This document shows positions 394-15,751 of a stretch of DNA of 64,000 bases, piece by piece (within the stretch, counting starts at the first letter, position 1; every line of letters begins with the position of its first letter). The notes under the pieces were generated by a model that did no database searches, was not told the origin of the DNA, and saw nothing but the letters and a program-made list of their open reading frames with translations. The stretch is from positions 408,750-472,749 of IMG/VR virus record IMGVR_UViG_3300050821_013430. One strand, written 5' to 3'. The translations under genes and the position numbers were made by a program.

Positions 394-473
394 GCCATCC
401 TCCTTCATTGTTCGAGTCTACGCCGCTGCCCCCATGCACATACGCACATGAGGGCAGAAACGGAGAAGCGAAC

Positions 474-1090: not shown

Positions 1091-1104
1091 GTCTCGACTC
1101 TCCT

Positions 1105-1310: not shown

Positions 1311-1317
1311 TGTTCGG

Positions 1318-1773: not shown

Positions 1774-1784
1774 CGTACTTCTCC

Positions 1785-1975: not shown

Positions 1976-1992
1976 TGTCATCCTACCTTGCC

Positions 1993-2385: not shown

Positions 2386-2450
2386 CTTTGACCTCCTTTG
2401 CCTACACTGTGGTTTGACCGCTACGACCTCATCCCCTCACCTTGTCCTAC
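2383..2450 (-). repeat. repeated intergenic element, copy 1 (copy 2 at 11105-11172)
   Basis: tcctttgcctaca(c/g)tgtggttt 21/22 identical, plus flanking cacctttg and cacctt(g/a)tcctac. Confidence 0.75.
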
Positions 2451-2477
2451 ACTCACTTCATTCGTGAGGTCTTCGAC

Positions 2478-2960
2478 CTACACCTTCACCCATTCCACCG
2501 TGCTCTTCCAGAACGGCGGAAGTCTTCTCTCCTTCAATCGTCGGTGCATAGCATACACCGCGGCGGGAGGACACCCGTGGATATTCCGCTGGGCGCACTT
2601 CGCCACCTCCTCCATCGTCCCACATCGGAGGGTAATGATCTCCGGCTCCCACCCGAAGGCCAGTGAGGCTTGATAGTAAGGAGCGATCTCCCATGCCTCC
2701 GTATTGGTATTGCAGACCACGATCAAGGGAGGAGGAATATCCTTCCATGGACACGCCACCTGCTCGATGAACCTACGGAAGCAATCAGCGTGCGCCTGTT
2801 CCAACTTGGACGGATCGAACTTGTAGTAGCCATCCGACATGGTGAAGAACTGATCGGCGCTGATTAGCGCCTTATGTCCGCTCGGCATAGGGAGACTATG
2901 TGCGTAGGTATCCTTCCCACTCCCAGGAATACCACTCATGATCACCACTCGCTTGCTCAT
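2478..2960 (-). CDS. AAA_33 P-loop protein (polynucleotide kinase / N4BP2-like)
   Basis: Walker A GIPGSGKD; SADQFF, LEQAHADC and NTNTEAWEIAPY motifs. Confidence 0.85.
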   Translation of the reverse strand: MSKRVVIMSGIPGSGKDTYAHSLPMPSGHKALISADQFFTMSDGYYKFDPSKLEQAHADCFRRFIEQVACPWKDIPPPLIVVCNTNTEAWEIAPYYQASLAFGWEPEIITLRCGTMEEVAKCAQRNIHGCPPAAVYAMHRRLKERRLPPFWKSTVEWVKV

Positions 2961-3199
2961 TGTTTCACCTCCACCAACCGATACAACTTCTTGGTATCCG
3001 TGTCGTAGAGCAGCACCTCTCCGCCCACATCCTCTGCATCCGCATACACCACATTGGGGCCATGTAGGTATTGGGCTAAGTAGGCGGAATCATACTTCCA
3101 GGCAGAGGAAAGCGGGCCCCATTGAAGATCGCTATTCAGAAACTGATTCAGATGTTTGGGATGCCGAATCACCAGAGCCAGATCGTCGATGTATCTCAT
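2957..3199 (-). CDS. hypothetical protein containing a 32-bp repeat
   Basis: Overlapping stop/start coupling with both neighbours. Confidence 0.6.
   Translation of the reverse strand: MRYIDDLALVIRHPKHLNQFLNSDLQWGPLSSAWKYDSAYLAQYLHGPNVVYADAEDVGGEVLLYDTDTKKLYRLVEVKQ
3062..3093 (+). repeat. 32-bp exact direct repeat, copy 1 (copy 2 at 14821-14852)
   Basis: atgtaggtattgggctaagtaggcggaatcat at both sites. Confidence 0.95.
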
Positions 3200-3507
3200 A
3201 CCCCCACCCTCTTCCTGTCCATCGCCACCGTGTGCATCACTCGCACCGTCTCGTACATCGAGGCTCCGGTGCGCTTGCTGTATGCCTTATAGGCATCCAA
3301 CTTGCTCTTGCCCGCAAACCAGGCACGAAACTCCTCGGGGAGAGGGGTCGCGAATTGACCCTTGGCCACCTTGGTATCCACCCTCAGGTGAATCTCATCC
3401 TCCACCATCCCTTTCAGGGAAACCAATTCCTCGTCGCTGAGACTCTTGACCACTTTCAGGGCCTTGTCTTCCTTCATCCCACTCTTCGGAGATTCCTTGG
3501 TAGTCAT
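3196..3507 (-). CDS. hypothetical protein
   Basis: AAGGAGG SD before MTTKES. Confidence 0.65.
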   Translation of the reverse strand: MTTKESPKSGMKEDKALKVVKSLSDEELVSLKGMVEDEIHLRVDTKVAKGQFATPLPEEFRAWFAGKSKLDAYKAYSKRTGASMYETVRVMHTVAMDRKRVGV

Positions 3508-3689
3508 CACATATCCTCCTTTGAGGGCAGTCGATACACTTTGGGCGTATCGTGATAGCAGCCTTCGCACACATCCCCAACGTACATGATCTTGTGGCCA
3601 GAAGTGGGCTGTTGGCAAGCGACAAGACCATCGACCCCGCCCTTGTTATGGTCTTGTTTGCAATGCAGACTCTCACAGTAGCAGGTCAT
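3507..3689 (-). CDS. small Cys-rich protein
   Basis: GGAGG SD, coupled to next gene. Confidence 0.55.
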   Translation of the reverse strand: MTCYCESLHCKQDHNKGGVDGLVACQQPTSGHKIMYVGDVCEGCYHDTPKVYRLPSKEDM

Positions 3690-3690
3690 C

Positions 3691-3993
3691 TCACACCTCC
3701 CATTCCGGGATCGTCCCGCCTGACATCACCGCCACACACCAGGAGTAGGCCTTGCTGAAAACTCCGTGTCCCTCGCACAAGGTGAGAGAGGCGATCTTGC
3801 TTGCCCACATCACGGAGATCGGATGACGGTTGAGGGCGGTGGTATTGAACTTGTCCCCCATCGACTCTTCCAACAGGGCTCGCAGGCGCGTAATATCCCG
3901 GGAAAAGGAATGCACCACTCCACTCAAATTGCAGGCGTTCTGAGAGGTGAACACATCCTCCGCCAAATCCTTCATGGTACGATTGTCGTCCAT
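3691..3993 (-). CDS. hypothetical protein
   Basis: GGGAG SD, operon tiling. Confidence 0.65.
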   Translation of the reverse strand: MDDNRTMKDLAEDVFTSQNACNLSGVVHSFSRDITRLRALLEESMGDKFNTTALNRHPISVMWASKIASLTLCEGHGVFSKAYSWCVAVMSGGTIPEWEV

Positions 3994-4114
3994 TGTCGTT
4001 CTCCCTTACTGTCGCTTGTCGAAGTAATCGGCAATCTCCGGGAGCAGGGCCATCGCCAATGCGAAACCCGACGCCACGCCCACAACGATGAGAGCAACTA
4101 CATGAGCAGCCATA

Positions 4115-4369
4115 TCACACCTCCTCGAATTGAACGGGGTTTTGACGGTCTTGGAGTTTCCAAGCCTTGACGCAGAGAGCCACGGCAGCGCCCAAGAAAG
4201 AGAACGCGGTGATGAACAAGACCACAGCCAGGGAGAAGTGCGCAGGGAAGGTCATATAGCCCACACCCAGCGCAACGCATCCGGTCAGTTTGCCCATTAC
4301 CAAGGCGCCGATAGCGAACCGATTGGTACGGATCACCTCGGGAGAAGGGGGAACTACTTGGTAGTACAT
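4115..4369 (-). CDS. small membrane protein
   Basis: Start at MYYQVV; two hydrophobic segments. Confidence 0.55.
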   Translation of the reverse strand: MYYQVVPPSPEVIRTNRFAIGALVMGKLTGCVALGVGYMTFPAHFSLAVVLFITAFSFLGAAVALCVKAWKLQDRQNPVQFEEV

Positions 4370-4522
4370 GGTGAGACTTCCTTTCCTCAGGAACACAGCC
4401 AGGAAACCAGGCCCAATACCCCGGAACCGATCACCAGTCCAATCCCAATCAGGATCAGAATCCAGGCACCGAAGTAGGCGAGGCGGAACCAACTCACATG
4501 ATGCTTATACACGCCCACCATC

Positions 4523-4786
4523 CTACTTCCCCTTACTCTCGAAGACGATAGGGGCCGGGATGCAATACTGAATCGCCCCATCGCACACCCACCCGTCCTT
4601 ACAAACGGAATCATTGGCGCAGGCGGTAGGAGGAGGCTCCGCCATCGCTTCCACCAGAACCTGAGAAATGGCCAGGTCATGCCGAAGGCGCAGGTCATCC
4701 AACACCACCAGCCCCAAACTCAGAGAGCCGAGGAAGGAGGCGAGGATCACCCACTTGTACTCATACATACGCTGATAGAGGTTCAT
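4523..4786 (-). CDS. membrane-anchored Cys-rich protein
   Basis: GGAGAGG SD; N-terminal TM; CANDSVCKDGWVC. Confidence 0.55.
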   Translation of the reverse strand: MNLYQRMYEYKWVILASFLGSLSLGLVVLDDLRLRHDLAISQVLVEAMAEPPPTACANDSVCKDGWVCDGAIQYCIPAPIVFESKGK

Positions 4787-4787
4787 G

Positions 4788-5075
4788 TCAGACCTCTCCC
4801 AAGATGTCGAAGATGTTGGCCGTAGGAACCACCGGAGCGGCGGGGGTGGGATGCTTGGCGTTGAGAGACTCCCAGCGGTTGAACTGCCCACGCACGATGA
4901 CATTGCCGTTCTGATGCTTCAAAGTCTGCGCATTCCCCATCTCGGAGAACTTGGGCGGGGAAGCGGCACGATCCTGCGACACCGTGCCACGATTGTTGGA
5001 TCGATTGTGGCGACGGAATCCCGACTTGCTCGCCTTGTTTTCCGACTTGTCCGCACTCTTGTTCTGCTTGGCCAT
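4788..5075 (-). CDS. basic low-complexity protein
   Basis: GGGAG SD before ATG 5075. Confidence 0.6.
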   Translation of the reverse strand: MAKQNKSADKSENKASKSGFRRHNRSNNRGTVSQDRAASPPKFSEMGNAQTLKHQNGNVIVRGQFNRWESLNAKHPTPAAPVVPTANIFDILGEV

Positions 5076-5204
5076 GGTAGTATCTCCCTATGCGTTGATT
5101 GGTTGAATTACCTGCGATTGACTGCGAACGATTTCGCTCGGAATCAAACGCAGAGAATTAGAACCCAGGACGGAGCGGATATAGGTGTAGGTAAGGAGTT
5201 CAAC

Positions 5205-5885
5205 ATGAAGAGTATCGAACGAGAAAAGGCACGGGTTATGCGACAAGAAGGACAGAGTGTTAGGGACATTGCTAAGGCGTTAGGGGTCGCCAGAAGTAGT
5301 GTCTCTGTATGGGTGAGGGATGTTGTACTTACTCAGGCGCAGATAGATGCGCTAACGACGCGCAATCCTATCTACGATAGGCAGCACAAGGGCGCGAAAG
5401 GAAGACAGCGATTAGCCAGGGAAGCACGCATTGAAGCCAGAAAAAACGGACACGAGGTAGCAAAACGAAAGGAATATCTGCACGCATTGGGATGTGGTCT
5501 GTACTGGGGCGAAGGAGCAAAGGATAGGGTAAGCTGTCAATTAGCCAACAGCGACCCATACTTACTGAAAGTATGGCTTCAATTCCTACATCAGTATTTC
5601 CCTGATGTGAAAACGACCCTGATCATCCATTGCTACACTGGCAACGGTCTATCAGTTGAGGAGATAGAGAATTACTGGTCTGACACCCTCGGTATTCCTA
5701 AGGGCGATTTCAGGAAGACAAGAGTGAATCCAATAAGTAGAGCGAGCCTACACAAGAAGCCACAGAACACGCTTCTCTACGGTACAGCACATATCACTGC
5801 TAAGAAAGGGATGCGAATAGTTCAACACATCTTCGGGGCCATTGAGGAATATGGTGGCTTCTCTACTGAGTTTGGGTTGGACTAA
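5205..5885 (+). CDS. HTH + LAGLIDADG-like putative homing endonuclease
   Basis: AAGGAG SD then ATG 5205; HTH (SVRDIAKALGVARSSVSVWV); GLYWGEG and NSDP...YWS motifs; opposite strand to neighbours. Confidence 0.7.
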   Translation: MKSIEREKARVMRQEGQSVRDIAKALGVARSSVSVWVRDVVLTQAQIDALTTRNPIYDRQHKGAKGRQRLAREARIEARKNGHEVAKRKEYLHALGCGLYWGEGAKDRVSCQLANSDPYLLKVWLQFLHQYFPDVKTTLIIHCYTGNGLSVEEIENYWSDTLGIPKGDFRKTRVNPISRASLHKKPQNTLLYGTAHITAKKGMRIVQHIFGAIEEYGGFSTEFGLD

Positions 5886-5891
5886 CTACAC

Positions 5892-5969
5892 TGGCGTCCC
5901 CATCCGGGCTCGAACCGGAACCAACAGATTGAAAGTCTGTCCGCCTAACCAGTTAGCAGATATGGGGAC
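5892..5969 (-). tRNA. tRNA-Glu (TTC) with encoded CCA
   Basis: Acceptor GTCCCCA/TGGGGAC+GCCA; anticodon arm ACAGA-CTTTCAA-TCTGT; T-loop GGTTCGAGCC. Confidence 0.93.
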
Positions 5970-5979
5970 ATACACTACT

Positions 5980-6360
5980 CTACTGCGGCACCAACTTCTT
6001 GATCATGTACTTGACCAAATCCCGATCAAAAGGCCACTCCTGTGTGGGAATCTTGGCAGCAGTCAGCCATGACCGAATGATGGCCGCGCCTTTCCCACCC
6101 CAACTATGGCTCACTGCTTGTGCGGGATAGTAGGATGGATCGAGTTCATTCACGATGAACTTCGCCACATCCTCCCCACTCCCATCTACGCCCAGGTCGT
6201 GATCCAACATCAGCAGACCGATCCGAACCGTCCCGGCTTGCAGAATCTCCTTCCCCTCATCGCAGGAGAAGGCATGCAAGACCACATGCCCCGCCGCGGT
6301 AAAGAGGTCTTCCGCCATGTCGTGCCGTGTCTGGTCATCATCCACGATCAGGATGTTCAT
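5980..6360 (-). CDS. cyclic-phosphate-processing receiver (cREC)-like domain protein
   Basis: ILIVDDD..R, LDHDLG and HSW..G motifs; start ATG 6360. Confidence 0.75.
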   Translation of the reverse strand: MNILIVDDDQTRHDMAEDLFTAAGHVVLHAFSCDEGKEILQAGTVRIGLLMLDHDLGVDGSGEDVAKFIVNELDPSYYPAQAVSHSWGGKGAAIIRSWLTAAKIPTQEWPFDRDLVKYMIKKLVPQ

Positions 6361-6361
6361 C

Positions 6362-6556
6362 TCACACCTCCTTCCCTTCCGGTTCCAGAAAGAACGCGTT
6401 GATGCGGCTCTCCTCCGTTTCCCCATCCCAGACCACATAGACCAACATGCCCCAAGTACGCTTACACACGCCCACCTTGACGTGCCACTCAGACTTGTTC
6501 TGAGCGGCGGAATGTCCCTGCACCCGATCTCCTGCCTTGACTGCGAAGAACGCCAT
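6362..6556 (-). CDS. small SH3/KOW-like protein
   Basis: KAGDRV...VYVVWDG pattern. Confidence 0.55.
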   Translation of the reverse strand: MAFFAVKAGDRVQGHSAAQNKSEWHVKVGVCKRTWGMLVYVVWDGETEESRINAFFLEPEGKEV

Positions 6557-6801
6557 TACCCCACCTCTCCTTTCAAGTCCTTCTCCATGTAGAAGTCCAG
6601 ATACCCATTGTCGAAGAGTACGACATAGGGGTACTTGTCCGCCCGGTACAGCCCCTCCCGATTCTCATTCAGGCGAATCACCTCGCCCGGCCCATGTCCG
6701 TCCGGATAGACTCCGAAGACATGCGCCACCCGATCCCCCACCTTGAACTTCAATTCCGCCGTTTTGGGCACATTGCCTCTCGGCATCTGATATTGACTCA
6801 T
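6556..6801 (-). CDS. small SH3-like protein
   Basis: KFKVGDRVAH...GEV...PYVVLFD. Confidence 0.6.
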   Translation of the reverse strand: MSQYQMPRGNVPKTAELKFKVGDRVAHVFGVYPDGHGPGEVIRLNENREGLYRADKYPYVVLFDNGYLDFYMEKDLKGEVG

Positions 6802-6942
6802 CTCATCCTCCCAGCAGTGCATACACTGCGGTGAAACTGGCTACACAGATGTACATCGCCCGAAGAAGAGTGTCGGTAATGTCAATGTCATCCATTGTCC
6901 TACCTCTTCTTGGGTTGGGGTTCGTCGAAGTGTAATCCTTGC

Positions 6943-7137
6943 TCATGACTTCTCCCTCATCGGAGGCGCACTCCGGTAGATGTATGTAGTTGAGGCCAGG
7001 ATGGCCCGTTCTCGTTCCTTCTGCCACCGGCCCCTCAGTGTCCGGTAATAGGCCCTCCCATCGAGGAACATACTTCGGCCCATGTAAAGCGACAGAACCG
7101 ACCAGATGGCAGCAGCAATGCATGAGATGATGTACAT
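6943..7137 (-). CDS. small membrane protein
   Basis: GGAGG SD; hydrophobic N-terminus. Confidence 0.5.
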   Translation of the reverse strand: MYIISCIAAAIWSVLSLYMGRSMFLDGRAYYRTLRGRWQKERERAILASTTYIYRSAPPMREKS

Positions 7138-7139
7138 GC

Positions 7140-7511
7140 TCACACCACCTCCCATCCCTGAGGATGCGTGGGATGGTAGTTGCAGGGGGTAGGAGCCCCA
7201 CACTTGTCGCAGGTGTGGGATTGGCAGGAAGCACGGAAGAACTCCATCTCTCGCTCCCTATCCGAGGTCTGCCCCTTGGTGGGCTGAGGTGGGAGACTGG
7301 GCACTTTCCGCTCCAAGTGTCGGGGGAGGGAGGGTTGGGTGTCGGGACAGGCCTCGTCGACTTCCACGAAACGGTCTGCGGAGTAGGGCGCATATTCGCC
7401 ACGATTGTCCTCCACTTCCAGCCATCCGGGCGAATAGGTGATAGCCCGATACTCTCTCCCCACCGTTAGCGCCCCTTCCTGCTTGGCGTTATTGACGCAC
7501 TTGACCTTCAT
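7140..7511 (-). CDS. hypothetical protein
   Basis: GAGG SD; MKVKCVNN...LTVGREY; C-terminal CDKC. Confidence 0.6.
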   Translation of the reverse strand: MKVKCVNNAKQEGALTVGREYRAITYSPGWLEVEDNRGEYAPYSADRFVEVDEACPDTQPSLPRHLERKVPSLPPQPTKGQTSDREREMEFFRASCQSHTCDKCGAPTPCNYHPTHPQGWEVV

Positions 7512-7527
7512 TGTCCCACCTCTCCCT

Positions 7528-8118
7528 TCAATCGTCTTTGCAGAAGCCGTTGTTCTCATGGCGCAGGTTGGCATACTGCACCACATCCACGCACATGACA
7601 TGAGGGGCTGCCTTCTGGTATTCAGGGAACATCAATGACACACCCGGTACGAAGGTGTGTTGAAGGCCTAACCCATGTCCCACTTCGTGCTGAGTGATGC
7701 CACTGAAACCTACAGCATCAATCCCATTCGCCTCCTCATCCGCCTCATCCCCAGGGACGAACACCCTCGCCCATTCGTGCCCCATGTGATCTGTCCAGTG
7801 ATAGGTGGTACCCACTGCGTTAGGGTCTCCGGAGAGGCGCCGAATCTCCTCCACGCTCTCACTGGTAATGGAGAAGGCGTTGTCGCAGGACTCATCGCAC
7901 ATCCGCTCCTCAATCACCACATCGAAGGACAGCCCCACATTGGCAGCCTTGGACTCCCACTCATCCAGACTTTCGAGCACCATCTGCATGTGGGGTGGGT
8001 CGAAGTGGGGGCTGATGTAGACGGTGTAGTGCGAAGGAGGATTGGCGCAGGCGGTGCCGAAGACGGATGCGGCGAACATCCCCAGCAAACCACCCACACC
8101 TAATTCCAGGGTTTTCAT
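7528..8118 (-). CDS. matrixin-like zinc metalloprotease, putative lipoprotein
   Basis: HEVGHGLGLQH plus Met-turn (SLMFP); signal peptide ending GTAC. Confidence 0.85.
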   Translation of the reverse strand: MKTLELGVGGLLGMFAASVFGTACANPPSHYTVYISPHFDPPHMQMVLESLDEWESKAANVGLSFDVVIEERMCDESCDNAFSITSESVEEIRRLSGDPNAVGTTYHWTDHMGHEWARVFVPGDEADEEANGIDAVGFSGITQHEVGHGLGLQHTFVPGVSLMFPEYQKAAPHVMCVDVVQYANLRHENNGFCKDD

Positions 8119-8480
8119 CGACCTACCTCCTGGTACAGACCCACACTCAGTCTCCCAAACTCCCCCACCGCGCACATCTGGTGATAAAGGGCGAGGGCGT
8201 CATCCACTGTTGGGCACTTCTCCAAGACACCTTTGGTGCCTGTAAGGAGATCAATGCCTCGAACGCACCACCGACCTTCTGGTAAGTGTCTGTATGCCCA
8301 CTTGCGCGGACAGAGGAACCGTAGGCTCTCCTTCACCTTTCCGTTCAACTCCTCCGATGTCTCACCCTCTACCACTTGGAACAACTGTATCCAACGGTAG
8401 TCGTTGTGGGATTGCAGGGCTTCCACACTCTCGTATGGGAGACTTACCTGCTTGTCCCTGAAAACAGCCACGAATCTCAC
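8115..8480 (-). CDS. hypothetical protein
   Basis: Coupled overlaps at both ends. Confidence 0.55.
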   Translation of the reverse strand: MRFVAVFRDKQVSLPYESVEALQSHNDYRWIQLFQVVEGETSEELNGKVKESLRFLCPRKWAYRHLPEGRWCVRGIDLLTGTKGVLEKCPTVDDALALYHQMCAVGEFGRLSVGLYQEVGR

Positions 8481-8725
8481 GGACTGCTCTTCTGGTCATA
8501 GGCCAGTTGCAGATTGAGCCAGAAGGCGACAGTAGAGCCTAACACCTTACTCAGGCGCTCGGCGATGTCGGGTGTGATGCTTGCTCGCTCATCCAGTAGC
8601 GCAACGATGGTGTAGGGAGGGATACCCGTTTGCCCCGCCAATTCCATTGCGCTCATGGTGAGAGGTTTGAGGTACTCCTCACGGATGACCTCACCAGGAT
8701 GGATTCGTCGCATACCGTTCTTCAT
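8477..8725 (-). CDS. higA: HigA-family antitoxin (XRE HTH), orphan
   Basis: IHPGEVIREEYL...SITPDIAERLSKVLG...FWLNLQ..YD signature. Confidence 0.88.
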   Translation of the reverse strand: MKNGMRRIHPGEVIREEYLKPLTMSAMELAGQTGIPPYTIVALLDERASITPDIAERLSKVLGSTVAFWLNLQLAYDQKSSP

Positions 8726-8928
8726 TGTCCTACCTTCAATTCCTTTTCGATCTCTCCGAAGTCCCTGTCGTACTCTTCCCACGCCAGTACGATACCGTGG
8801 GAGGTGTTAGTCCAGCGCTTACCATTGAAGTCCAGGTAGGTGCCGGTGTTCTGATAATCGACCACCATTCGCGCCAACATCCGCTTGGAACGCAGCATGG
8901 TGGGGATGGGATCACATCCGGTGTACAT
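8722..8928 (-). CDS. hypothetical protein
   Basis: Coupled to higA; no HigB/RelE motif seen. Confidence 0.55.
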   Translation of the reverse strand: MYTGCDPIPTMLRSKRMLARMVVDYQNTGTYLDFNGKRWTNTSHGIVLAWEEYDRDFGEIEKELKVGQ

Positions 8929-9160
8929 GTGCTTACCCCTTCCTTCTCTTTCGGGGGAAATTGGCTCGAATCAGTCGGAGGCATTCCTGCCAGGTGAGAA
9001 CACCTGCGCCACCATCGTCCAAAACGACCCAGATGGGATCACACGCTGGGGGAGTGTTGAAGTATCCCCTGATGTATCCGTAAGTAGCCGTGGTATCGAA
9101 GTCTTGCCGCGGCTTGCTTACGGGTAGGGATGGCGAGCAGGCGAAGTAAGATGACTGCCT

Positions 9161-9370
9161 TCATTTCCCCTCCTCATACCACCTCAGGATGGCTTTGAGG
9201 GTTTCGGGGGAGAGGATGACACTTTGCATTCCCGCACCCTCACCCTGGGTGATCTTGAAGGTGGATTCCCCATCATGTAGGGAAAGGTAGTCGATCCACT
9301 TGACCACCTCGACCTTGGGCGTCTCTTCCGCCCCACCACTGAAACACATCTTGTCGCCGATCTTGCGCAT
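9161..9370 (-). CDS. hypothetical protein
   Basis: GGAGG SD before MRKIGDK. Confidence 0.6.
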   Translation of the reverse strand: MRKIGDKMCFSGGAEETPKVEVVKWIDYLSLHDGESTFKITQGEGAGMQSVILSPETLKAILRWYEEGK

Positions 9371-9375
9371 GTTCC

Positions 9376-9558
9376 TTACCTCCCCTTCTTGGAATACACC
9401 GCCCGCAGCGAGACGATGGCCAGGGCTACGAACAGACAGGTGCTCCAGGCCACTTCGAGGGTATTCAAGTTGAAGGCGGTGTGGGAGAGTGCGGGGAAGA
9501 AGAAGTACAGCATCCAGGTGGTGGCGATGGCAAACCCGATGGCAACGAACGCTTTCAT
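9376..9558 (-). CDS. 60-aa two-TM membrane protein, paralog of 474..653
   Basis: GGAGG SD; MKAFVAIG...AFNLNTLEVAWSTCLFVALAIVSLRAVYSKK. Confidence 0.7.
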   Translation of the reverse strand: MKAFVAIGFAIATTWMLYFFFPALSHTAFNLNTLEVAWSTCLFVALAIVSLRAVYSKKGR

Positions 9559-9650
9559 GACATCCTCCGAGGTTGTGGGTGGTTGAACGCAAGTGAAACC
9601 TGCCAGCGAAGCGCCGCTTGAACAAGCGACAAGGTAAGATGACTGCGACC

Positions 9651-9947
9651 TCAGGCTGTCTTCGCCTCCTTGGCGAGCTCCCGACACACTCTGCACGGCT
9701 CCTTGTGGATGCAGGTGCCGGTCTCCTTCAATTCAGACGATTGGGCGGTGATCTCGTACACCGTCTCCGCCTTGGGGAGCAGACCGTACTCCGAACTCGC
9801 GATGTAGGTCTTGGCAGTCGGGCCGGTGCCCAGGGTGAGAGTGGCGATCCCAGTGTAAGTAGACCAGTCCCCTTCCTTCCGATTGCCTGCCACCCCCGCC
9901 ACGATTCGGAACCGTCCGTGATTGTCGTACTCGATGGTGAATTGCAT
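9651..9947 (-). CDS. hypothetical protein
   Basis: AAGGAG SD. Confidence 0.65.
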   Translation of the reverse strand: MQFTIEYDNHGRFRIVAGVAGNRKEGDWSTYTGIATLTLGTGPTAKTYIASSEYGLLPKAETVYEITAQSSELKETGTCIHKEPCRVCRELAKEAKTA

Positions 9948-9971
9948 GTGAGTATCTCCTTGTGTGGGTGG

Positions 9972-10247
9972 TTAGCGGCCGAGGTAGTCCAGCAGGTTCT
10001 CGTCTCCCCCGCCGAAGTCCTCTTCCCCACCTTGTGCGCTGCCTCGGTTGGCCTTGGGGATGATTGAGAACACGTTCATCGAAACGCGTACCTGTCCGTG
10101 CTCTCCGTCCTTTCCGCACACCCGCTGAGGGCCGCGGCTGCTGTAGATGATCTGGCTCTTGCCGGTCTTGCTCTGTCCCACCTTCTGGCTCAAATCGAGC
10201 CGAATGGTGAGAATGTCTCCGTCCAGGCTCATATCGATCTCTTGCAT
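9972..10247 (-). CDS. conserved small beta-rich protein (possible nucleic-acid binding)
   Basis: AAGGAG SD; LTIRLDLSQKVGQSKTGKSQII resembles a widespread uncharacterised family. Confidence 0.65.
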   Translation of the reverse strand: MQEIDMSLDGDILTIRLDLSQKVGQSKTGKSQIIYSSRGPQRVCGKDGEHGQVRVSMNVFSIIPKANRGSAQGGEEDFGGGDENLLDYLGR

Positions 10248-10291
10248 GACACTTGTTCTCCTTGTCGGTTGTTGTGGGTTGGATGTAGGGG

Positions 10292-10588
10292 TTAGGCGGA
10301 CTTGAGCCACGCTGACATGTCCATGCTCTCCTCTCCCGTCTTGTAGACGGTCGAGGTGTTCTCCGGGTCGACGTTTCCGCCGTTCTGCTCCAATTCGTTC
10401 ACCGTGTCGCCGAGGAGGAGGTTCAGCAGGGCGAAGCCGGAAGCATACTCCAAGACTACACGTCGGGCCTCATGGTAGTTGCCTTCCTCACCTCGGGTCT
10501 CGATCTCCGCCCGAACAGCCTTGCGGCTCAGGGCGCGAATGGGGGCGTTGCCGCAGTTGCTCTCAGCAATCCAATATGCCAGTTGCAT
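10292..10588 (-). CDS. hypothetical protein
   Basis: GGAG SD. Confidence 0.65.
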   Translation of the reverse strand: MQLAYWIAESNCGNAPIRALSRKAVRAEIETRGEEGNYHEARRVVLEYASGFALLNLLLGDTVNELEQNGGNVDPENTSTVYKTGEESMDMSAWLKSA

Positions 10589-10604
10589 GATGATCTCCGT
10601 TGTT

Positions 10605-10845
10605 GAGCCCCCTTGGGGGCGGTTGTCGTTTCGTATCCCAAGTTATCCCAGCAGTCAGCCCACATGAACGCAGAATGTGGCGGGGTATCGACGAGGCCCA
10701 TTCCAGCCCCTCATCCCGTCTGACATTCCCACAATTACCCCCGTTGAAGGTAAAGCGGGGCTTTCATGTAGGCTGACTGCTGAGGGGCTCCCAACCGGAG
10801 CCCGCAGACCGAAACCCCCTAAGGGATACCCTTGGAGGCTTCAAT
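10605..10845 (-). ncRNA. multibranch structured RNA
   Basis: 22-bp stem 10647-10668/10763-10784 whose mismatches are G-U on the minus strand; hairpins 10811-10842 and 10607-10620. Confidence 0.6.
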
Positions 10846-10853
10846 CCGACATC

Positions 10854-11099
10854 TCAGTCCAAGTGCCCACCCGTTCGGGGCGTAGGCACACCGTTGCTAC
10901 CTCCGCCTACTTCCTGCCACGGCATTCCCGCATCATCCCAGGTTGGCGCCCCGCAAGGGATGCCTTGTTGATGCGCCGTGTAGCAGAAGTCAGGATACTG
11001 TTGCCCACCGTCATCCGCGGTGGGGGTGTAGTCTACCGGGCCCGCACCATAGGCGCAGCCGCTCAACATCACGCACGCTGCCATCAGGTATCGAGCCAT
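10854..11099 (-). CDS. small lipoprotein
   Basis: Lipobox LSGC after a hydrophobic stretch. Confidence 0.6.
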   Translation of the reverse strand: MARYLMAACVMLSGCAYGAGPVDYTPTADDGGQQYPDFCYTAHQQGIPCGAPTWDDAGMPWQEVGGGSNGVPTPRTGGHLD

Positions 11100-11104
11100 T
11101 GTTG

Positions 11105-11172
11105 CACCTTTGCTTCCTTTGCCTACAGTGTGGTTTTTGACGCCTTCGCACTCTTCCGCACCTTATCCTACC
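11105..11172 (-). repeat. repeated intergenic element, copy 2
   Basis: See 2383-2450. Confidence 0.75.
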
Positions 11173-11375
11173 TTTGCCTTCTCGAACTCCGCCAGGATCA
11201 CATCCACCGATGCGATGGCTTCCTGCACCAATTCGGTCTCGATGCTGGCTTGCTCGATGTAGTCATCCGCACACATCAGCACCTTTTCCTTTCCCAGCCG
11301 GTGGATGGCAGGTAGATTGACTTCCTCCAAGGTGAGAATGCGACCGCAGAAGAAACAGCCGTAGATGTGGGCCAT
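11163..11375 (-). CDS. hypothetical protein
   Basis: Operon tiling; CFFC. Confidence 0.55.
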   Translation of the reverse strand: MAHIYGCFFCGRILTLEEVNLPAIHRLGKEKVLMCADDYIEQASIETELVQEAIASVDVILAEFEKAKVG

Positions 11376-11377
11376 TG

Positions 11378-11656
11378 TCAGTACCCCATCTCGATTACTT
11401 CGTTCTCGGCCGCAATGTCAGCCTGCCTCCGACAGAAGGCGCAAGTGGGCTCACACATCCCATCGCATCCCACCTCCTCGGCTTCGGCGCTCAGGTCGAG
11501 CACCCCCGGCTCCTCCGCCATCGGCACCAGTTTCAGCACCTTGTCGTACATCGTGTTCAGGGTGCCGTGCAGCTCCTTGTCCCCACACTCCGACATGTGG
11601 GCTCGGATGAGACGACGAAGCAGGCTCAGCTCCATCGCGGTGAATTGAGAGTCCAT
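11378..11656 (-). CDS. hypothetical protein
   Basis: AGGAGG SD before MDSQF. Confidence 0.65.
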   Translation of the reverse strand: MDSQFTAMELSLLRRLIRAHMSECGDKELHGTLNTMYDKVLKLVPMAEEPGVLDLSAEAEEVGCDGMCEPTCAFCRRQADIAAENEVIEMGY

Positions 11657-11690
11657 GTAGTCCTCCTGGGGTGGATGTGGTTGAATGTGC

Positions 11691-11878
11691 GCCAAAGTCT
11701 GCCCCGGGCTCCCTATCTGTCCGCTTCTCTCCGGTGCGTGGGGGTCTATGGGTGGAGAGAGGCTAACAGGAGACCGAGGCAGACTTTGACGGGGGATGTG
11801 GCTAAATACCTACATCCCCCTACATGCGCCAGAAACACTTGTAGCCAGGAGCAGAACCGAAGTCCCACTCCCAGCTAC
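11691..11878 (-). ncRNA. three-hairpin structured RNA
   Basis: 100-nt rod 11691-11790; hairpin 11791-11820; 17-bp G-U-rich stem with C(UUCG)G loop 11841-11878 on the minus strand. Confidence 0.65.
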
Positions 11879-11881
11879 TTG

Positions 11882-12109
11882 TCAGGGGAAGGAGAGCAAA
11901 TGCTCACACTTCCGCCCATTGTCAGACAGACGGAGGAAGATGCGTACCACCTCCCCCGAGATGCCCCACTCCTCTCCCACATCGTAGGCCCAGGTAGAGA
12001 AGACGCAGCTATCGCCGATACGCACCTTGCGCTGAAAGGTAGGATGCCACATCAGGGCCAGGCTGAACTGTACGGCGAGGTACTCCAAGGCACGGAGATG
12101 TAGGGTCAT
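11882..12109 (-). CDS. hypothetical protein
   Basis: Operon tiling. Confidence 0.45.
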   Translation of the reverse strand: MTLHLRALEYLAVQFSLALMWHPTFQRKVRIGDSCVFSTWAYDVGEEWGISGEVVRIFLRLSDNGRKCEHLLSFP

Positions 12110-12110
12110 C

Positions 12111-12335
12111 TCAGTACCCCACCGGCATGAAACCTACACTCTTGCACTTGGGGCACTTGGGTGAGTCCTTGGTGATTCCCAGCCCGCGGTAGAAGGCCAC
12201 ACGATCGGCGGGCATAGGCTTCTTGTGATCCTTGTGCCCACATTCCTCACACCGCCAGAACGGCTTGGGAGGTGTGATCTCACCTACGGGCATGTCGTCG
12301 CCGGACACGAAATCGTCATCGAAGTCGTTCATCAT
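12111..12335 (-). CDS. small Zn-ribbon protein
   Basis: CEEC...CPKC; GGAGG SD. Confidence 0.65.
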   Translation of the reverse strand: MMNDFDDDFVSGDDMPVGEITPPKPFWRCEECGHKDHKKPMPADRVAFYRGLGITKDSPKCPKCKSVGFMPVGY

Positions 12336-12529
12336 CCCACCTCCGTGTAGTGAAAAGCGTACAGGTACGGGGGGCCATCCACCCGCACGTTCGTCCGTCG
12401 ACGCACCCTCTTACCTTTGACCAACTCCTCGTACACGGGGAGCGGCTCCTGGGAGAAGATGCCATCTCGGCGCTGATGTAGGGAAGCAAGCGCCAATGCG
12501 ACTACCTCGGCAGAAAAGACACCCATCAT
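12332..12529 (-). CDS. hypothetical protein
   Basis: GGAGG SD before MMGVFS. Confidence 0.55.
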   Translation of the reverse strand: MMGVFSAEVVALALASLHQRRDGIFSQEPLPVYEELVKGKRVRRRTNVRVDGPPYLYAFHYTEVG

Positions 12530-12542
12530 CCCACCTCCTCGT

Positions 12543-12953
12543 TCAATCCGTTGGACAACCCGACTCGTACCACATGGTACGAGCATCGTCTGCTCTGTCT
12601 TGCGCCACCTGACGTTGGTACTTGAGGTACGCAGCCAGGTGCTCCTTCTGCTCCGGTGTGGTACAAGCGTCCCCATCCACCACCAGAACCACGTTCTTGC
12701 CCCCACACACCTCACAGGGGACGTCGTACATCCCACCTCGTGAGAAGTAGGCTTCCCTTTCCTCACTGCCGGGCTCGAACGCCTCGTCGAACTCCTCTTG
12801 TGAGTAGGCGTGGTTGCCGATGCTCGGTGTCAGGTGAGTGCCGTGTCCATCGCACTTGGAGCACACTTCGTGCTTGTGTGGGAGGAGTGCGACCACCTCG
12901 TCCCCGGTTTCGACGTCGTGGTAGGTGACTTCCCGACTTTGGGGCCGCATCAT
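12543..12953 (-). CDS. protein with DnaJ-type CxxCxGxG Zn motifs
   Basis: CSKCDGHG, CEVCGGK; GGAGG SD. Confidence 0.65.
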   Translation of the reverse strand: MMRPQSREVTYHDVETGDEVVALLPHKHEVCSKCDGHGTHLTPSIGNHAYSQEEFDEAFEPGSEEREAYFSRGGMYDVPCEVCGGKNVVLVVDGDACTTPEQKEHLAAYLKYQRQVAQDRADDARTMWYESGCPTD

Positions 12954-13229
12954 CCCACCTCCTCCTCTTCCTCCTCACACTCGTCTTTGTCCTCTGCCAT
13001 CATGCCCGACATATAGGCGACCGTGCGCCTGTCCTCGCACTCCGCCCACACTTCCGCCATTTCCCGACGTTGATCCCTGGGAGCCTTCATTGTCATACCT
13101 CCTCACAACCTGCCATACCATATGATAGGCTGTGAGGAACTATCCCACATGCTGCCCCAAACGCAGAAAACACGAATCCCCAGAAAGGAGCCTTGTGGCC
13201 CCTTTCCAGGGTGAATGTAGGTGGATGCC

Positions 13230-13430
13230 CTACTTGACTCGTTCCGCCTCACCTTGTGGGATGTCCTGCACCCCGAAGCGCTGCTGTAGGGTCATTGTCC
13301 CCATAGCGCCCAGGTTGTAGTCAAAGGTGACCACGGTGTGGGTTCCTTCCCGCTTGACTACGGTAACCTCCCACACTTGGCCATACTTGACCGAAAGGTG
13401 GGCGCGGATGGTAGGCGAGATGTCGTTCAT
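13230..13430 (-). CDS. hypothetical protein
   Basis: Start at MNDISPT. Confidence 0.5.
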   Translation of the reverse strand: MNDISPTIRAHLSVKYGQVWEVTVVKREGTHTVVTFDYNLGAMGTMTLQQRFGVQDIPQGEAERVK

Positions 13431-13620
13431 TGTCCTACCTACCACGCCACCGCGACCAGACAAGCCACCACGTAGGCCAGTGCCGCACCATAGGCGATGA
13501 TGTTGTTCATTGTGTGTCTTCTCCCTTCGTGTCGGTTGGGAAACTACAACGGCCCCAAACCTCCCGTGTATGGGAAGTTAGGGGCCGGAGGGTAGTTCTC
13601 CTACCTTGTAGGCTGGGAAC

Positions 13621-14136
13621 CTACTTCGCCGCGGGGGGAGTCACCTTGACGCAAAGCGTCTTGGATGCGTCCGCAAGGCGCGTCACGACGAAACCGAGTT
13701 CCTTACAGCGGATCGCGACTTGCTCGATCGCCATTCCGCTCTCGAATGCCTCGGAAAGCGCCGAACACGGCACGTTGTACGACCCGGGGAAACCGCCGAG
13801 CGAGGCACGCAAGCCAGCGGAAAGCCCGTTGTACTCGGCGCGGCGCGTCTCGTACTCTTCCGCATACGGCCCCATGAGATTCGCCAGATCCGCGCGAATC
13901 TGTTTCTCGGCCTCGCGCTTCCGCTCGGTCGCCATGAACGAAAGCGACTTGATCACGCGATCGTTGACGGTACGGATCGTGTCGGGAGTCAGCACCTTGT
14001 CGCCGAGAGCCTTGCCGTTGGGCCAGGCATTGGCGAAGATTGCGTGCAAGGTCGACAGTGCCTCGGTCGCCGCGCTCTCTTCCGTCTCGGAAAGGACCAG
14101 AACCTTGTTACTCGTGTCGCTGGGAATCATGGCCAT
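13621..14136 (-). CDS. first gene of the leftward early array, unknown function
   Basis: AGGAG SD before ATG 14136; very GC-rich codons. Confidence 0.75.
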   Translation of the reverse strand: MAMIPSDTSNKVLVLSETEESAATEALSTLHAIFANAWPNGKALGDKVLTPDTIRTVNDRVIKSLSFMATERKREAEKQIRADLANLMGPYAEEYETRRAEYNGLSAGLRASLGGFPGSYNVPCSALSEAFESGMAIEQVAIRCKELGFVVTRLADASKTLCVKVTPPAAK

Positions 14137-14149
14137 GATGACGTATCTC

Positions 14150-14707
14150 CTGTTATGTCCCATGTGGGACGGTTGGGTTACTACTGAACGCTACTGCTAC
14201 GTAGCGGTTAGAACCTAAGGCGCCGCGAAGCACCGCGCAACGTGGCATACTACTTGCCTTAGATGCTAACCGCTACGGGAAACGATGTAGGGGGAACCTA
14301 TACAGTGTGGCTCGACTCCTTACATCGTTTCCGTATCCTGGTAGGATGCTATCTCTACCTGATAGTCCAGTGTCGTTTTCTCCCTATGTTTTCGGGGGGT
14401 TAGGAAGGACGGGACACGTAACGAGTATCCGACCTAACACTAGACAGGATGACCTGGCCCTACTCTAGCCTACCTTGTGGCAGACCACGCACCCACTATG
14501 TGGGACATCTTCCGCCTCCGCTTTCATCGCCCCACCTTGCACCCCTTACGGGGTATGCATGTAAGACGCTAGGACGTTTGGCGCCGATGTAGGACTATTA
14601 GGTTGTCAGGGAGCAGAGGTCATCCAACATCCTACCTTGTCCCACGTTGCGACCACGGATGTAGCGCGCGGTGCGGGAGGGTAGGTTGCGGGAGAGGACC
14701 ACGATAC
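14150..14707 (-). ncRNA. large (~560 nt) structured leader / ncRNA
   Basis: 12-bp stems 14200-14211/14266-14277 and 14278-14289/14321-14332; long-range stem 14447-14455/14617-14625; GUAA tetraloop hairpin 14541-14554. Confidence 0.6.
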
Positions 14708-14717
14708 AGACATAGAT

Positions 14718-14734
14718 AGCACGTGCTATGCCAA
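14718..14734 (-). promoter_or_regulatory. sigma54-type promoter (predicted TSS ~14707)
   Basis: TTGGCATAGCACGTGCT = GG-N10-GC; overlaps palindrome ATAGCACGTGCTAT; directly upstream of the structured leader. Confidence 0.55.
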
Positions 14735-14820
14735 GAGAGGGTAGAGGCTAACTATGCGGAATCATTGGAGAGGCACCTGATGTAGGGCAAGGTGGGATGG
14801 GGGCGGGAGCCCAGGGTACG

Positions 14821-14852
14821 ATGTAGGTATTGGGCTAAGTAGGCGGAATCAT
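14821..14852 (+). repeat. 32-bp exact direct repeat, copy 2
   Basis: Identical to 3062-3093; partial variant ggctaactatgcggaatcatt at 14746-14766. Confidence 0.95.
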
Positions 14853-14929
14853 TGGGGATAGGGTTGGGGTATGGGGCCCCCAGGGTGGGGGAGCCTACCC
14901 TCACCCCCAGGGTAGGGGTCTTGCCTACC

Positions 14930-15300
14930 TGGTACAGTTGTTGTATGGGATAGAAGCATGCCAAGCCTAGAGGGTAGGGGGAGGTAGGACAGGGCGGGGA
15001 TGGCCGGTATCTTGCACCGGATAAACTCATGCCAAGGGTGCCGTGTAGTACAAGGTGGGAGATGTAGGGCAAGGTCGGGCGGTGCAAAACCCATGCCAAG
15101 TGGTAGGATAAGGTGGTTTGGGGCCGGTTGGCATTGAAACTGCAAGGGAAAGGAACATGCCAAGGGCTTTTGGTAGGAAGTTGTAGGAGATGGTAGGTTT
15201 CTCGAGGAATGGCATAGGTATTGCAGGGGAAAGAAGGATACCAGCAGAAAGGTGGGATATTGTAGTTGGTATGGGGATTGCAAGGACAAGAAGCATGCCA
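14930..15300. repeat. array of five 34-bp dyad elements made of inverted sigma54-like boxes
   Basis: Units at 14930, 15001, 15129, 15210 and 15267, each TGG-N10-G(C/T)-N4-NN-N10-CCA; half unit ending 15098. Confidence 0.8.
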
Positions 15301-15691
15301 TAGGGGGCTGGAGCCCCCGTTTCCTGGGAGGTAGGCCAGGGTGGGGCGGTGTGGGCCTCCCAAACAGGGGTAAAACACTCTTCCGCCCGCCTTCAACACT
15401 AATCCCTCCCATTCAATCAAACCCTGCTCGACACTAATCTGACTATCCTATCCGCCCCACCAATCCTACCATTCCTAAACACCCCTCAATCTATTCCACC
15501 TTACCTTACTGCCCGAAACTACTCCTCCTATAAGGCCCTAGGAAGCGTCGCACCTTAGAACGTAGGGGGATGTCAATCTCAGTCGAAAGCGTCCTATAAC
15601 TAAGCCTAGCCCCACTAATAGGCCATCTACCCACCACCGCCACTTCAAATCAGACCCCCTCAACCCTCAAAACCTGGATAATTCGCCGAAC

Positions 15692-15733
15692 TGCAAAATT
15701 GACGCCGGAAACCGAATGCAAGAATCGTGCCAA
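15692..15733 (-). promoter_or_regulatory. tandem sigma54-type boxes
   Basis: TTGGCACGATTCTTGCA (15717-15733, consensus match) and CGGCGTCAATTTTGCA (15692-15707). Confidence 0.65.
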
Positions 15734-15751
15734 AATGTAAGCGTCAAATGA

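What the first reader, a model, noticed from the sequence alone, without database searches (positions are those of the whole stretch)
3062..14852. Exact 32-bp repeat shared between a coding sequence and the control region
Seen: atgtaggtattgggctaagtaggcggaatcat at 3062-3093 (inside ORF 2957..3199, encoding DSAYLAQYLH) and at 14821-14852, same orientation, 11,759 bp apart. Partial variants lie at 14746-14766 and, weakly, near 58150. Inference: a protein-binding or site-specific recombination site. Recombination would loop out most early genes with their putative promoter. A plus-strand transcript of copy 2 would instead be antisense to the mRNA.
Basis: partly seen in the sequence, partly recalled or inferred. 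Interest (0 to 1): 0.6.

Follow-up and report, generated by a model that had tools for sequence, protein, structure and literature searches.

The report
Regulatory DNA word copied into gene
An exact 32-base word from the main control region of an uncultivated 473-kb phage also sits inside a small early gene 11.8 kb away; it is most likely a copied piece of regulatory DNA, not a recombination site, and is a modest curiosity.

Summary
The repeat is real. The identical 32-mer lies at 3062-3093 and 14821-14852, in the same orientation. These are the only two copies in the 472,749-bp phage record, and other assemblies show the same layout.

Copy 2 belongs to its surroundings. It lies in a roughly 1.6-kb non-coding, motif-dense region between a leftward block of small early genes and the rest of the genome. 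It joins two boxes that recur there: ATGTAGG and a 21-bp box with a second copy 87 bp upstream. An otherwise unrelated 2.25-kb metagenome contig has the same tandem pair of 21-bp boxes, the same ATGTAGG enrichment and the same sigma-54-type -24/-12 look-alike sites.

Copy 1 is a truncated version of this word. It covers exactly ten codons (plus two bases) of an 80-aa orphan gene and uses the two rarest local Leu codons. Its flanks show no residual similarity to those of copy 2.

My best reading is that a short patch of regulatory DNA was copied into a coding sequence. It may act as an extra binding site, but this is unproven.

The genome has no tyrosine or serine recombinase, the word has no dyad symmetry, and no promoter or terminator signature frames a plus-strand RNA across copy 2. 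Read-level tests could not be run. Interest is modest.

The parts
3062..3093 (+). Copy 1 (W1) of the 32-mer, inside a coding sequence. On the minus strand it is two bases of a Tyr codon plus exactly ten codons (DSAYLAQYLH).
2957..3199 (-). P0002, an 80-aa orphan early gene that carries W1. It has a Shine-Dalgarno site and overlaps both neighbours by 4 bases, and its frame has a coding-type codon signature.
14821..14852 (+). Copy 2 (W2) of the 32-mer: an ATGTAGG box plus the 21-bp box, in its native non-coding context.
14746..14768 (+). W3, a diverged second copy of the 21-bp box (21 of 23 bases), starting 87 bp before the box inside W2.
14718..14733 (-). Sigma-54-type -24/-12 look-alike pointing left, 12 nt from W3. 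Contig L004 has the same box-to-site arrangement.
15083..15098 (-). Sigma-54-type -24/-12 look-alike pointing left, toward W2.
15717..15732 (-). Full-consensus sigma-54-type site pointing left. It matches the site next to the box in L005 at 15 of 16 bases.
14930..15300 (+). Five 34-bp units (TGGYAY-N5-TTGCA ... CATGCCA) starting at 14930, 15001, 15129, 15210 and 15267. Two of them match the strict -24/-12 pattern on the + strand.
14912..14932 (+). GGTAGG-loop-CCTACC hairpin word. It recurs at genome 369490-369510, and its core CTTGCCTACCT recurs in L005.
14164..15750 (.). The non-coding control region. It is enriched about 30-fold for ATGTAGG, about 7-fold for GTAGG, and holds all five -24/-12 pattern matches found in the window. 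The ORFs called inside it do not look like proteins.

Best explanation
The 32-mer is a composite regulatory word that belongs to the phage's main control region. It consists of an ATGTAGG box followed by a conserved 21-bp box (GGCTAA.TA.GCGGAATCATT). In the control region the 21-bp box occurs as a tandem pair (W3 and W2, 87 bp apart) among sigma-54-type -24/-12 look-alike sites. It most likely acts as a DNA site for a sequence-specific factor that organises those sites (inferred, not shown). The copy inside gene P0002 (W1) is a secondary, recent, non-reciprocal patch of this word. It amounts to ten in-frame codons written into an early orphan gene, by templated repair or template switching (inferred). 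W1 lacks the last conserved bases of the box. It is therefore at best a weaker extra site for the same factor, and it may have no function of its own. As a side effect, two 32-bp direct repeats could support rare homologous deletion of the 11.76 kb between them.
For: 1) W2 is native to its context. Both of its sub-boxes have further copies nearby. ATGTAGG occurs 5 times in 1.6 kb against 0.17 expected, and the 21-bp box has a second copy at 14746.
2) Contig L005 shares no other DNA or protein similarity with this genome. Yet it has two tandem 21-bp boxes 94 bp apart, 14 ATGTAGG words against 0.32 expected, the core of the CTTGCCTACC hairpin word, and a -24/-12 consensus 26 nt downstream of the second box.
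3) All five matches to TGGCAY-N6-TGCW in the 64-kb window fall within 14718-15732, against 0.59 expected for the whole window. Of six strict matches in the 473-kb genome, four lie here.
4) W2 fits the shared consensus beyond the repeat. The CG before it is shared with L005 as a 10-mer, and the T that follows ATCAT is present in all five control-region-type copies. W1 breaks off inside the box, reading ATCAT then A.
5) The flanks of W1 and W2 show no residual similarity (p = 0.06-0.3), so only a short patch was copied.
6) On the coding strand the repeat is exactly ten codons plus two bases. Both of its Leu codons, TTA and CTA, are the rarest of the six in the local gene set (5 and 9 of 218). 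The segment falls in the 9th percentile for synonymous codon usage.
7) P0002 looks like a real gene. Its frame has the best codon score in both halves, the Atlas model has pLDDT 0.69 and pTM 0.65, and JGI called it as a gene. The ORF over W2 does not look real, with pLDDT 0.28 and pTM 0.13.
8) A profile of the box finds only W2, W3 and W1 in the genome.
Against: No binding factor is known, and the host is unknown. The box is not palindromic and does not match the IHF consensus as I recall it (compared by eye). The phage encodes no sigma-54 and no enhancer-binding protein; its only PF00158 hit is a ClpB-type ATPase. The -24/-12 look-alikes occur on both strands, and some do not face genes, so they may be sites for another protein that recognises TTGGCATG. 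HMMER gives weak matches of P0002 to PD40-type propeller repeats in which DSAYLAQY aligns with the blade motif. That would make the peptide native to the gene. However, the other hits are heterogeneous repeat proteins, and Pfam gives nothing even at E up to 10. The whole argument for conservation rests on one good relative (L005) and one possible relative (L004). The number of database hits is itself within chance expectation, and only the extra shared features make L005 convincing. The copying mechanism is pure inference.
Confidence: 0.45

Rival explanations
1. W1 is a working distal site. The factor that binds W2 and W3 also binds W1 inside the early operon. There it would act as an auxiliary operator, a roadblock to leftward transcription, or a remote enhancer-type site. 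In this reading the 32/32 identity is kept by selection.
For: W1 keeps both boxes intact over 32 bp. It carries rare codons, as expected if the DNA sequence is constrained independently of the protein. ATGTAGG boxes in the same orientation are scattered through the right part of the early block; 9 of the 18 genome-wide + strand GATGTAGG copies lie in window 9801-15061.
Against: W1 lacks the terminal T (and the G/A-G that follows it) conserved in all other copies. It lies 11.7 kb from the control region, and no -24/-12 site with a GC at -12 lies next to it (checked by eye). Identity at positions that vary among the other copies points to a recent copy rather than selection.
Confidence: 0.2
2. 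The word acts in the sense strand of leftward transcription, as RNA or as the non-template DNA strand. It would appear once in the long leader (W2, W3) and again 11.7 kb into the operon (W1), like nut/put or ops elements that load an antitermination factor.
For: All three copies have the same orientation relative to the leftward gene block. Leftward promoter-like sites lie to the right of W2, at 15083-15098 and 15717-15732. The leftward transcription unit is very long.
Against: In L005 the boxes lie upstream of, not downstream of, the co-oriented promoter-like site and genes. W2 shows no significant local RNA structure (z = 0.5 and -1.2). The word does not match the ops consensus as I recall it. 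Rfam gives nothing.
Confidence: 0.1
3. A + strand RNA made across copy 2 pairs with 32 nt of the P0002 mRNA and silences it or triggers its cleavage (a trans-acting antisense RNA).
For: Complementarity would be perfect over 32 nt if such an RNA exists. The sharp boundaries and exact identity fit an RNA-RNA target pair.
Against: No promoter-like site lies upstream of W2 on the + strand and no terminator lies downstream. The region has no structured or known RNA. The box is conserved in L005 and probably L004, whose sequenced stretches share nothing else with this genome, so an RNA targeting this orphan mRNA does not explain the conservation. No other control-region segment matches any gene.
Confidence: 0.08
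4. The two copies are recombination partners. Exchange between them excises an 11.76-kb circle carrying about 35 early genes and tRNA-Glu, in the manner of T4-type PeSL mini-circles or an integrated element's attL and attR.
For: The copies are direct repeats of a length that phage or host homologous recombination can use. PeSL cassettes in T4-type phages do exactly this between repeated regulatory elements (PMC2839356). The repeat is read in the same frame in both places.
Against: The genome has no tyrosine or serine recombinase and none lies in the interval. The interval has the same GC content, gene style and strand as its left neighbour. Control-region motifs continue on both sides of W2, and the P0002 ORF is continuous across W1. 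The assemblies whose DNA could be compared show the unrearranged form. One copy is intragenic, unlike PeSLs.
Confidence: 0.1
5. It is an assembly artefact. A separate 11.76-kb circle sharing a 32-mer with the phage was threaded into the contig.
For: De Bruijn graphs branch at a 32-bp repeat. No further genes are listed beyond copy 2 on a 31.6-kb Logan contig, so that contig may stop there.
Against: Removing the interval would break P0002, whose two halves both score as coding in one frame. It would also split the control region. Composition is uniform across both junctions. Three or more assemblies agree.
Confidence: 0.02

Closest known systems
Auxiliary operators inside coding sequences (for example lac O2 within lacZ, or the distal OD operator of phage TP901-1); from general knowledge
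   Same: A copy of a control-region binding word lies inside a downstream coding sequence of the same transcription unit.
   Different: Those sites lie tens to hundreds of bp away, or a few kb at most, are similar rather than identical, and have a known repressor. Here the distance is 11.7 kb, the identity is 32 of 32 with a truncated box, and no factor is known.
PeSL promoter-early stem-loop cassettes of T4-type phages (PMC2839356, PMC4122927)
   Same: These are repeated regulatory words within blocks of small orphan early genes. Direct repeats of this kind can recombine and release mini-circles.
   Different: PeSLs are many, intergenic, sigma-70-type promoter-plus-terminator units. Here there are only two exact copies, one is inside an ORF, there is no terminator hairpin, and no recombinant form was seen.
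Sigma-54 promoter regions with upstream activator or bending-protein sites
   Same: Several high-information matches to the -24 GG / -12 GC consensus are clustered. The 21-bp box lies 12-13 nt upstream of such a site in two contigs and 26 nt upstream in a third.
   Different: The box is not a dyad, which would be unusual for an activator site. No sigma-54 or activator is encoded by the phage, the host is unknown, and the sites occur on both strands.
Lambda nut, HK022 put and RfaH ops elements
   Same: These are same-sense repeats of a short word, in the leader and far inside a long operon.
   Different: There is no boxA/boxB-like hairpin and no ops consensus. In L005 the box lies upstream of the promoter-like site.
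Phage antisense immunity RNAs (P4 CI RNA with seqA/seqC; P1 c4 RNA)
   Same: A short word in a control region matches a word in early transcripts.
   Different: Those pairs are complementary within one transcript. Here the copies are direct, so pairing would need an unpredicted + strand RNA.
attL/attR cores flanking integrated elements
   Same: Exact direct repeats of a few tens of bp bracket an 11.8-kb segment that contains a tRNA gene.
   Different: There is no integrase, no compositional island and no dyad core, and both repeat contexts are continuous functional units.

Membership tests
Sigma-54-dependent promoter/enhancer region | -24 GG and -12 GC elements with fixed spacing (TGGCAC-N5-TTGCW) | tested here: met
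   There are five matches to TGGCAY-N6-TGCW, all within 14718-15732, against 0.59 expected in 64 kb. L005 has 3 against 0.01 expected and L004 has 1 against 0.01.
Sigma-54-dependent promoter/enhancer region | Sigma-54 and an AAA+ enhancer-binding activator are available | tested here: inconclusive
   The phage has no Sigma54_DBD domain. Its only PF00158 hit is a ClpB-type chaperone. The host is unknown, so host supply cannot be judged.
Sigma-54-dependent promoter/enhancer region | Upstream activator sites with dyad symmetry about 80-150 bp upstream | tested here: not met
   The 21-bp box and the 32-mer have no dyad symmetry (inspection). L004 has a separate AAGTGCC dyad further upstream.
Site-specific recombination site (att, res or dif type) | A cognate tyrosine or serine recombinase is encoded | tested here: not met
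   PF00589 and PF00239 give no match in the 472,749-bp genome, while the control genomes give matches.
Site-specific recombination site (att, res or dif type) | A core with inverted-repeat arms around a crossover spacer | tested here: not met
   The two halves of the 32-mer are not complementary beyond a terminal ATG/CAT (inspection).
Integrated mobile element (attL/attR) | The bracketed segment differs in composition or gene content from its flanks | tested here: not met
   GC content, skew, strand and gene size are the same on both sides of 3062.
Trans-acting antisense RNA | A promoter and terminator frame the antisense copy on the right strand | tested here: not met
   No sigma-70-like or -24/-12 site lies upstream of 14821 on the + strand, and no intrinsic terminator was found.
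Trans-acting antisense RNA | The RNA is expressed and affects its target | not testable with these tools
CRISPR spacer/protospacer pair | The spacer is flanked by direct repeats of about 23-37 bp within an array | tested here: not met
   Only an 8-mer (CCCAGGGT) recurs around W2. No array-like repeats exist in the genome.
PeSL-type mobile regulatory cassette | Many intergenic promoter-plus-stem-loop copies flanking orphan genes | tested here: not met
   The genome has only three copies of the box, and one is intragenic.
PD40/TolB-type beta-propeller repeat (for P0002) | A significant match to the family profile | tested here: inconclusive
   phmmer gives 1.6e-10 to a 1,063-aa PD40 protein, summed over seven weak stretches. 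Pfam gives no hit even at E up to 10.

The most novel reading that the evidence does not exclude
A 473-kb phage runs the switch region between its early block and the rest of its genome on host sigma-54-type promoters. These are organised by a conserved 21-bp box shared with at least one other uncultivated phage-like element. An intragenic copy of that box, 11.7 kb inside the early operon, would work as a remote enhancer, operator or roadblock.
Probability: 0.1. Interest if true: 0.7.

Novelty: new variant of a known kind. Interest (0 to 1): 0.35.

Why it matters
If the reading is right, this is a clean natural example of a short piece of regulatory DNA being written into a protein-coding gene as ten in-frame codons. 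That is one route by which phage orphan genes change, and by which regulatory sites spread into operons. The context matters more than the repeat itself. A conserved box sits next to clustered sigma-54-type sites in a very large phage. As far as I know, dependence of phage control regions on sigma-54 is hardly documented. The region therefore offers a concrete, testable entry point into how such phages time their gene expression.

Tried and rejected
The junction, coverage and transcription tests could therefore not be run, and I did not seek them by another route.
- Chance: rejected.
- Assembly artefact: rejected on ORF continuity, motif continuity and several concordant assemblies.
- Known RNA families: none found at the gathering threshold or at E up to 5.
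- RNA structure around W2: not significant.
- CRISPR-like array: none.
- DGR-like extended similarity in the flanks: none.
- Conserved host gene fragment (tRNA- or tmRNA-type att core): rejected. The degenerate box gives only 8 hits in 185,579 species genomes, fewer than my rough estimate of chance hits, and their contexts are unrelated.
- tRNA-Glu D-arm resemblance (shared 7- and 8-mers): judged to be chance.
- Mini-ORF (MIPxT) and shared-peptide readings of the box: rejected. There is no Shine-Dalgarno site, the differences among the copies change the encoded residues or create a stop (W3) rather than being silent, and the 215-aa ORF over W2 is not protein-like.
- Relatives of P0002: none found by pattern scan, word search, the 1.8-billion-protein HMMER search or a search of the phage's own genome. 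The 'do orthologues lack the peptide' test therefore has no material.
- AlphaFold on the single P0002 sequence: uninformative (pLDDT 42).
- L007-L015 hits: their number is at or below my rough chance estimate, so they were not used.
- The over-represented word in the GC-rich block turned out to be a Cys-Pro-x-Cys-Gly codon motif of a family of small genes, not a regulatory signal.
- Phage-encoded enhancer-binding protein: the candidate is ClpB-like.
- Literature searches gave no report of sigma-54 phage promoters that bears on this case.

Full report
**Observation.** The 32-mer is present exactly as reported, at 3062-3093 and 14821-14852 on the + strand, 11,759 bp apart. Shuffles give no matches. 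The window is the last 64 kb of a 472,749-bp virus record, and these are the only two copies in it even at 3 mismatches. I listed all exact repeats in the genome and set aside the 353-bp terminal overlap, tandem and low-complexity repeats, and one family of paralogous genes. What remains makes this the longest exact dispersed repeat. Copy 1 (W1) lies in the minus-strand ORF 2957..3199 (P0002, 80 aa) and encodes DSAYLAQYLH. The partial copy at 14746 (W3) is real, matching 21 of 23 bases. The proposed weak copy near 58150 is only a shared 10-mer, and I discard it.

**Is the assembly sound?** A separately assembled 84-kb metagenome contig is 99.99% identical and carries both 32-mers and W3 in the same layout. 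Protein look-ups show further assemblies of 472,404 bp, 31,623 bp and 2,200 bp. No further genes are listed beyond copy 2 on the 31.6-kb Logan contig, so it may stop near there, as expected for a graph that branches at a 32-bp repeat. The alternative of a separate 11.76-kb circle threaded into the contig would break P0002. Both halves of that gene score as coding in one frame. It would also split a region whose motif families continue on both sides of copy 2. I consider the assembly sound.

**Context.**
- The genome has an unusual GC profile: 35-40% over the first 240 kb, rising to 50-57% between 245 and 424 kb, then dropping sharply at window position about 15.5 kb.
- Window 737-14163 is a tight array of small minus-strand genes with strong Shine-Dalgarno sites. 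Almost all of them are orphans.
- The exceptions are a + strand HTH protein (4785-5885) and tRNA-Glu (5892-5969, minus strand).
- Window 14164-15750 is not protein-like. Gene callers disagree on overlapping ORFs there. The 215-aa ORF has an Atlas model with pLDDT 0.28 and pTM 0.13, against 0.69 and 0.65 for P0002.

**What the control region contains.**
- Two long hairpins lie at 14200-14332, and the minus strand of 14164-14480 folds with z = -5.0.
- GATGTAGG boxes lie at 14284, 14586, 14779, 14820 and 15061.
- W3 and W2 are the two copies of the 21-bp box.
- CCCAGGGT occurs three times.
- A GGTAGG/CCTACC hairpin lies at 14912-14932.
- Five 34-bp units lie between 14930 and 15300.
- All five window matches to the sigma-54-type pattern TGGCAY-N6-TGCW fall at 14718-15732, against 0.59 expected for the whole window. 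Three point left and two point right.
- A second, smaller region at genome 369.4-369.9 kb shares several of these words but has no 21-bp box.

**Copy 2 is native to this region.** W2 is an ATGTAGG box joined to the 21-bp box, and both have paralogues nearby. The pattern scan of metagenome contigs recovered a 2.25-kb contig, L005. L005 shares no other DNA or protein similarity with this genome. It nevertheless has several of the same features:
- two tandem 21-bp boxes 94 bp apart (87 bp here);
- 14 ATGTAGG words against 0.32 expected;
- the core of the same hairpin word;
- three -24/-12 pattern matches against 0.01 expected. One lies 26 nt downstream of the second box and matches the site at 15717-15732 at 15 of 16 bases.

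A 1.1-kb contig, L004, has one box 13 nt from a -24/-12 consensus on the opposite strand. That is the same arrangement as W3 and the site at 14718-14733, where the gap is 12 nt. The raw number of database hits is within chance expectation. It is these extra shared features, not the hits themselves, that make L005 convincing and L004 plausible. The remaining hits (L007-L015) are treated as chance.

**Copy 1 is derived.**
- W2 fits the shared consensus beyond the repeat on both sides. It has CG before ATGTAGG, as in L005, and the T after ATCAT that all five control-region-type copies carry. W1 stops inside the box.
- The flanks of W1 and W2 have no residual similarity, so only a short patch is shared.
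- On the coding strand the repeat is two bases of a Tyr codon plus exactly ten codons. That fits a 30-bp in-frame insertion plus two bases matching by chance.
- Both Leu codons in the repeat are the two rarest in the local gene set (5 and 9 of 218), and the segment is in the 9th percentile for synonymous usage.
- The Atlas's nearest structural neighbours of P0002 are viral proteins of 70-73 aa that align over 63-64 residues. This is compatible with a ten-residue insertion, but I could not check which residues are unaligned.
- Against this, HMMER finds weak repeat-summed matches to PD40-type propeller proteins in which DSAYLAQY aligns with the blade motif. The other hits are unrelated repeat proteins, and Pfam finds nothing. 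I rate this as weak.
- No orthologue or paralogue of P0002 exists in any collection searched.

**Mechanism.** I commit to the following. The 21-bp box is a DNA site for a sequence-specific factor associated with the -24/-12 sites. W2 and W3 are its working copies. W1 is a copied patch that is tolerated in frame. This has two parts. The cis-regulatory nature of W2 and W3 is supported by recurrence and cross-contig conservation. The copy event and its direction are inferred from consensus fit, sharp boundaries and codon usage. Whether W1 does anything is open, and I give about 0.2 to a working distal site.

The sigma-54 label is a lead, not a finding. The pattern enrichment is very strong. However, the phage has no sigma-54 or activator, the host is unknown, the sites occur on both strands, and several share TTGGCATG, which could equally be a half-site for another protein.

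**Rivals.**
- Site-specific recombination is not supported. The genome has no tyrosine or serine recombinase, the word has no dyad core, there is no compositional island, and no alternative junction was recovered.
- Homologous exchange between two 32-bp direct repeats remains physically possible, and would resemble PeSL mini-circle formation in T4-type phages (PMC2839356). It is untested.
- The antisense model lacks a + strand promoter or terminator around W2 and does not explain conservation of the box in unrelated contigs.
- A same-sense leader/operon element of the nut, put or ops type fits the orientation here, but not the placement of the boxes upstream of the promoter-like site in L005.

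**Verdict.** The finding is a new variant of a known kind, namely a regulatory word duplicated into a coding sequence. Interest is modest. The more interesting by-product is the conserved box among clustered sigma-54-type sites in the control region of a very large phage.

Noticed in passing
whole record G000 (window 1-15500 is the high-GC end): GC content ramps along the genome. It is 35-40% over the first 240 kb and rises steadily to 50-57% at 245-424 kb, a stretch that in this window consists of small orphan genes on the minus strand. It then drops sharply to about 45% at window position about 15.5 kb.
   Followed up: partly
window 14718-15732: Sigma-54-type -24/-12 look-alikes are clustered here. 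All five window matches, and four of six strict genome-wide matches, fall within 1 kb, on both strands. Five 34-bp units ending in CATGCCA lie among them.
   Followed up: partly
window 14164-14480: The stretch just upstream of the first early gene is strongly structured. Two adjacent long hairpins have 22-bp and 12-bp arms, and the minus strand folds with z = -5.0. There is no Rfam match.
   Followed up: partly
genome 369400-369900 (outside the window): A second non-coding region shares the ATGTAGG word, the CTTGCCTACCTGG hairpin word and AGAAGCATGCCAAGCC with the control region, in the opposite orientation. It has two -24/-12 matches but no 21-bp box.
   Followed up: partly
window 19350-20471 (+): A TnpB-type gene (Cas12f1-like TNB plus OrfB_IS605 domains) lies 4.5 kb right of copy 2. 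No TnpA was seen among the neighbouring genes I scanned, and I found no link to the repeat.
   Followed up: partly
window 4785-6438: The only + strand gene in the early block is an HTH_38/HTH_23 protein at 4785-5885. It abuts tRNA-Glu(UUC) at 5892-5969 on the minus strand. A cREC_REC receiver-like protein lies at 5980-6438. A PNK-like AAA_33 kinase (2478-2960) lies directly downstream of P0002.
   Followed up: no
genome 216000-358000 (outside the window): At least 21 small minus-strand genes end in the same Cys-Pro-x-Cys-Gly-Glu codon motif. In most of them the motif's GGAG appears to serve as the ribosome-binding site of a start codon that follows closely. This points to a large family of small zinc-ribbon-like genes.
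   Followed up: partly
genome 1-353 and 472397-472749: The ends of the record overlap by 353 bp with three mismatches. This suggests a circular or permuted genome of about 472.4 kb with some population variation, although the record is classed as 'linear'.
   Followed up: no
window 9275-15062: ATGTAGG words are strongly biased to the + strand (13 against 3 in window 1-16000). Nine of the 18 genome-wide + strand GATGTAGG copies lie in window 9801-15061, and several are inside early genes.
   Followed up: partly
window 4606-4617: An isolated 12-mer, CGGAATCATTGG, matches the 3' end of the 21-bp box including the bases that W1 lacks. It lies inside an early gene. It is not significant on its own (E = 0.84).
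   Followed up: no
window 36961-58121: A run of very large proteins has pectate-lyase-like N-terminal domains, and one protein is collagen-repeat-rich (806 aa). These are probably tail fibres or depolymerases.
   Followed up: no
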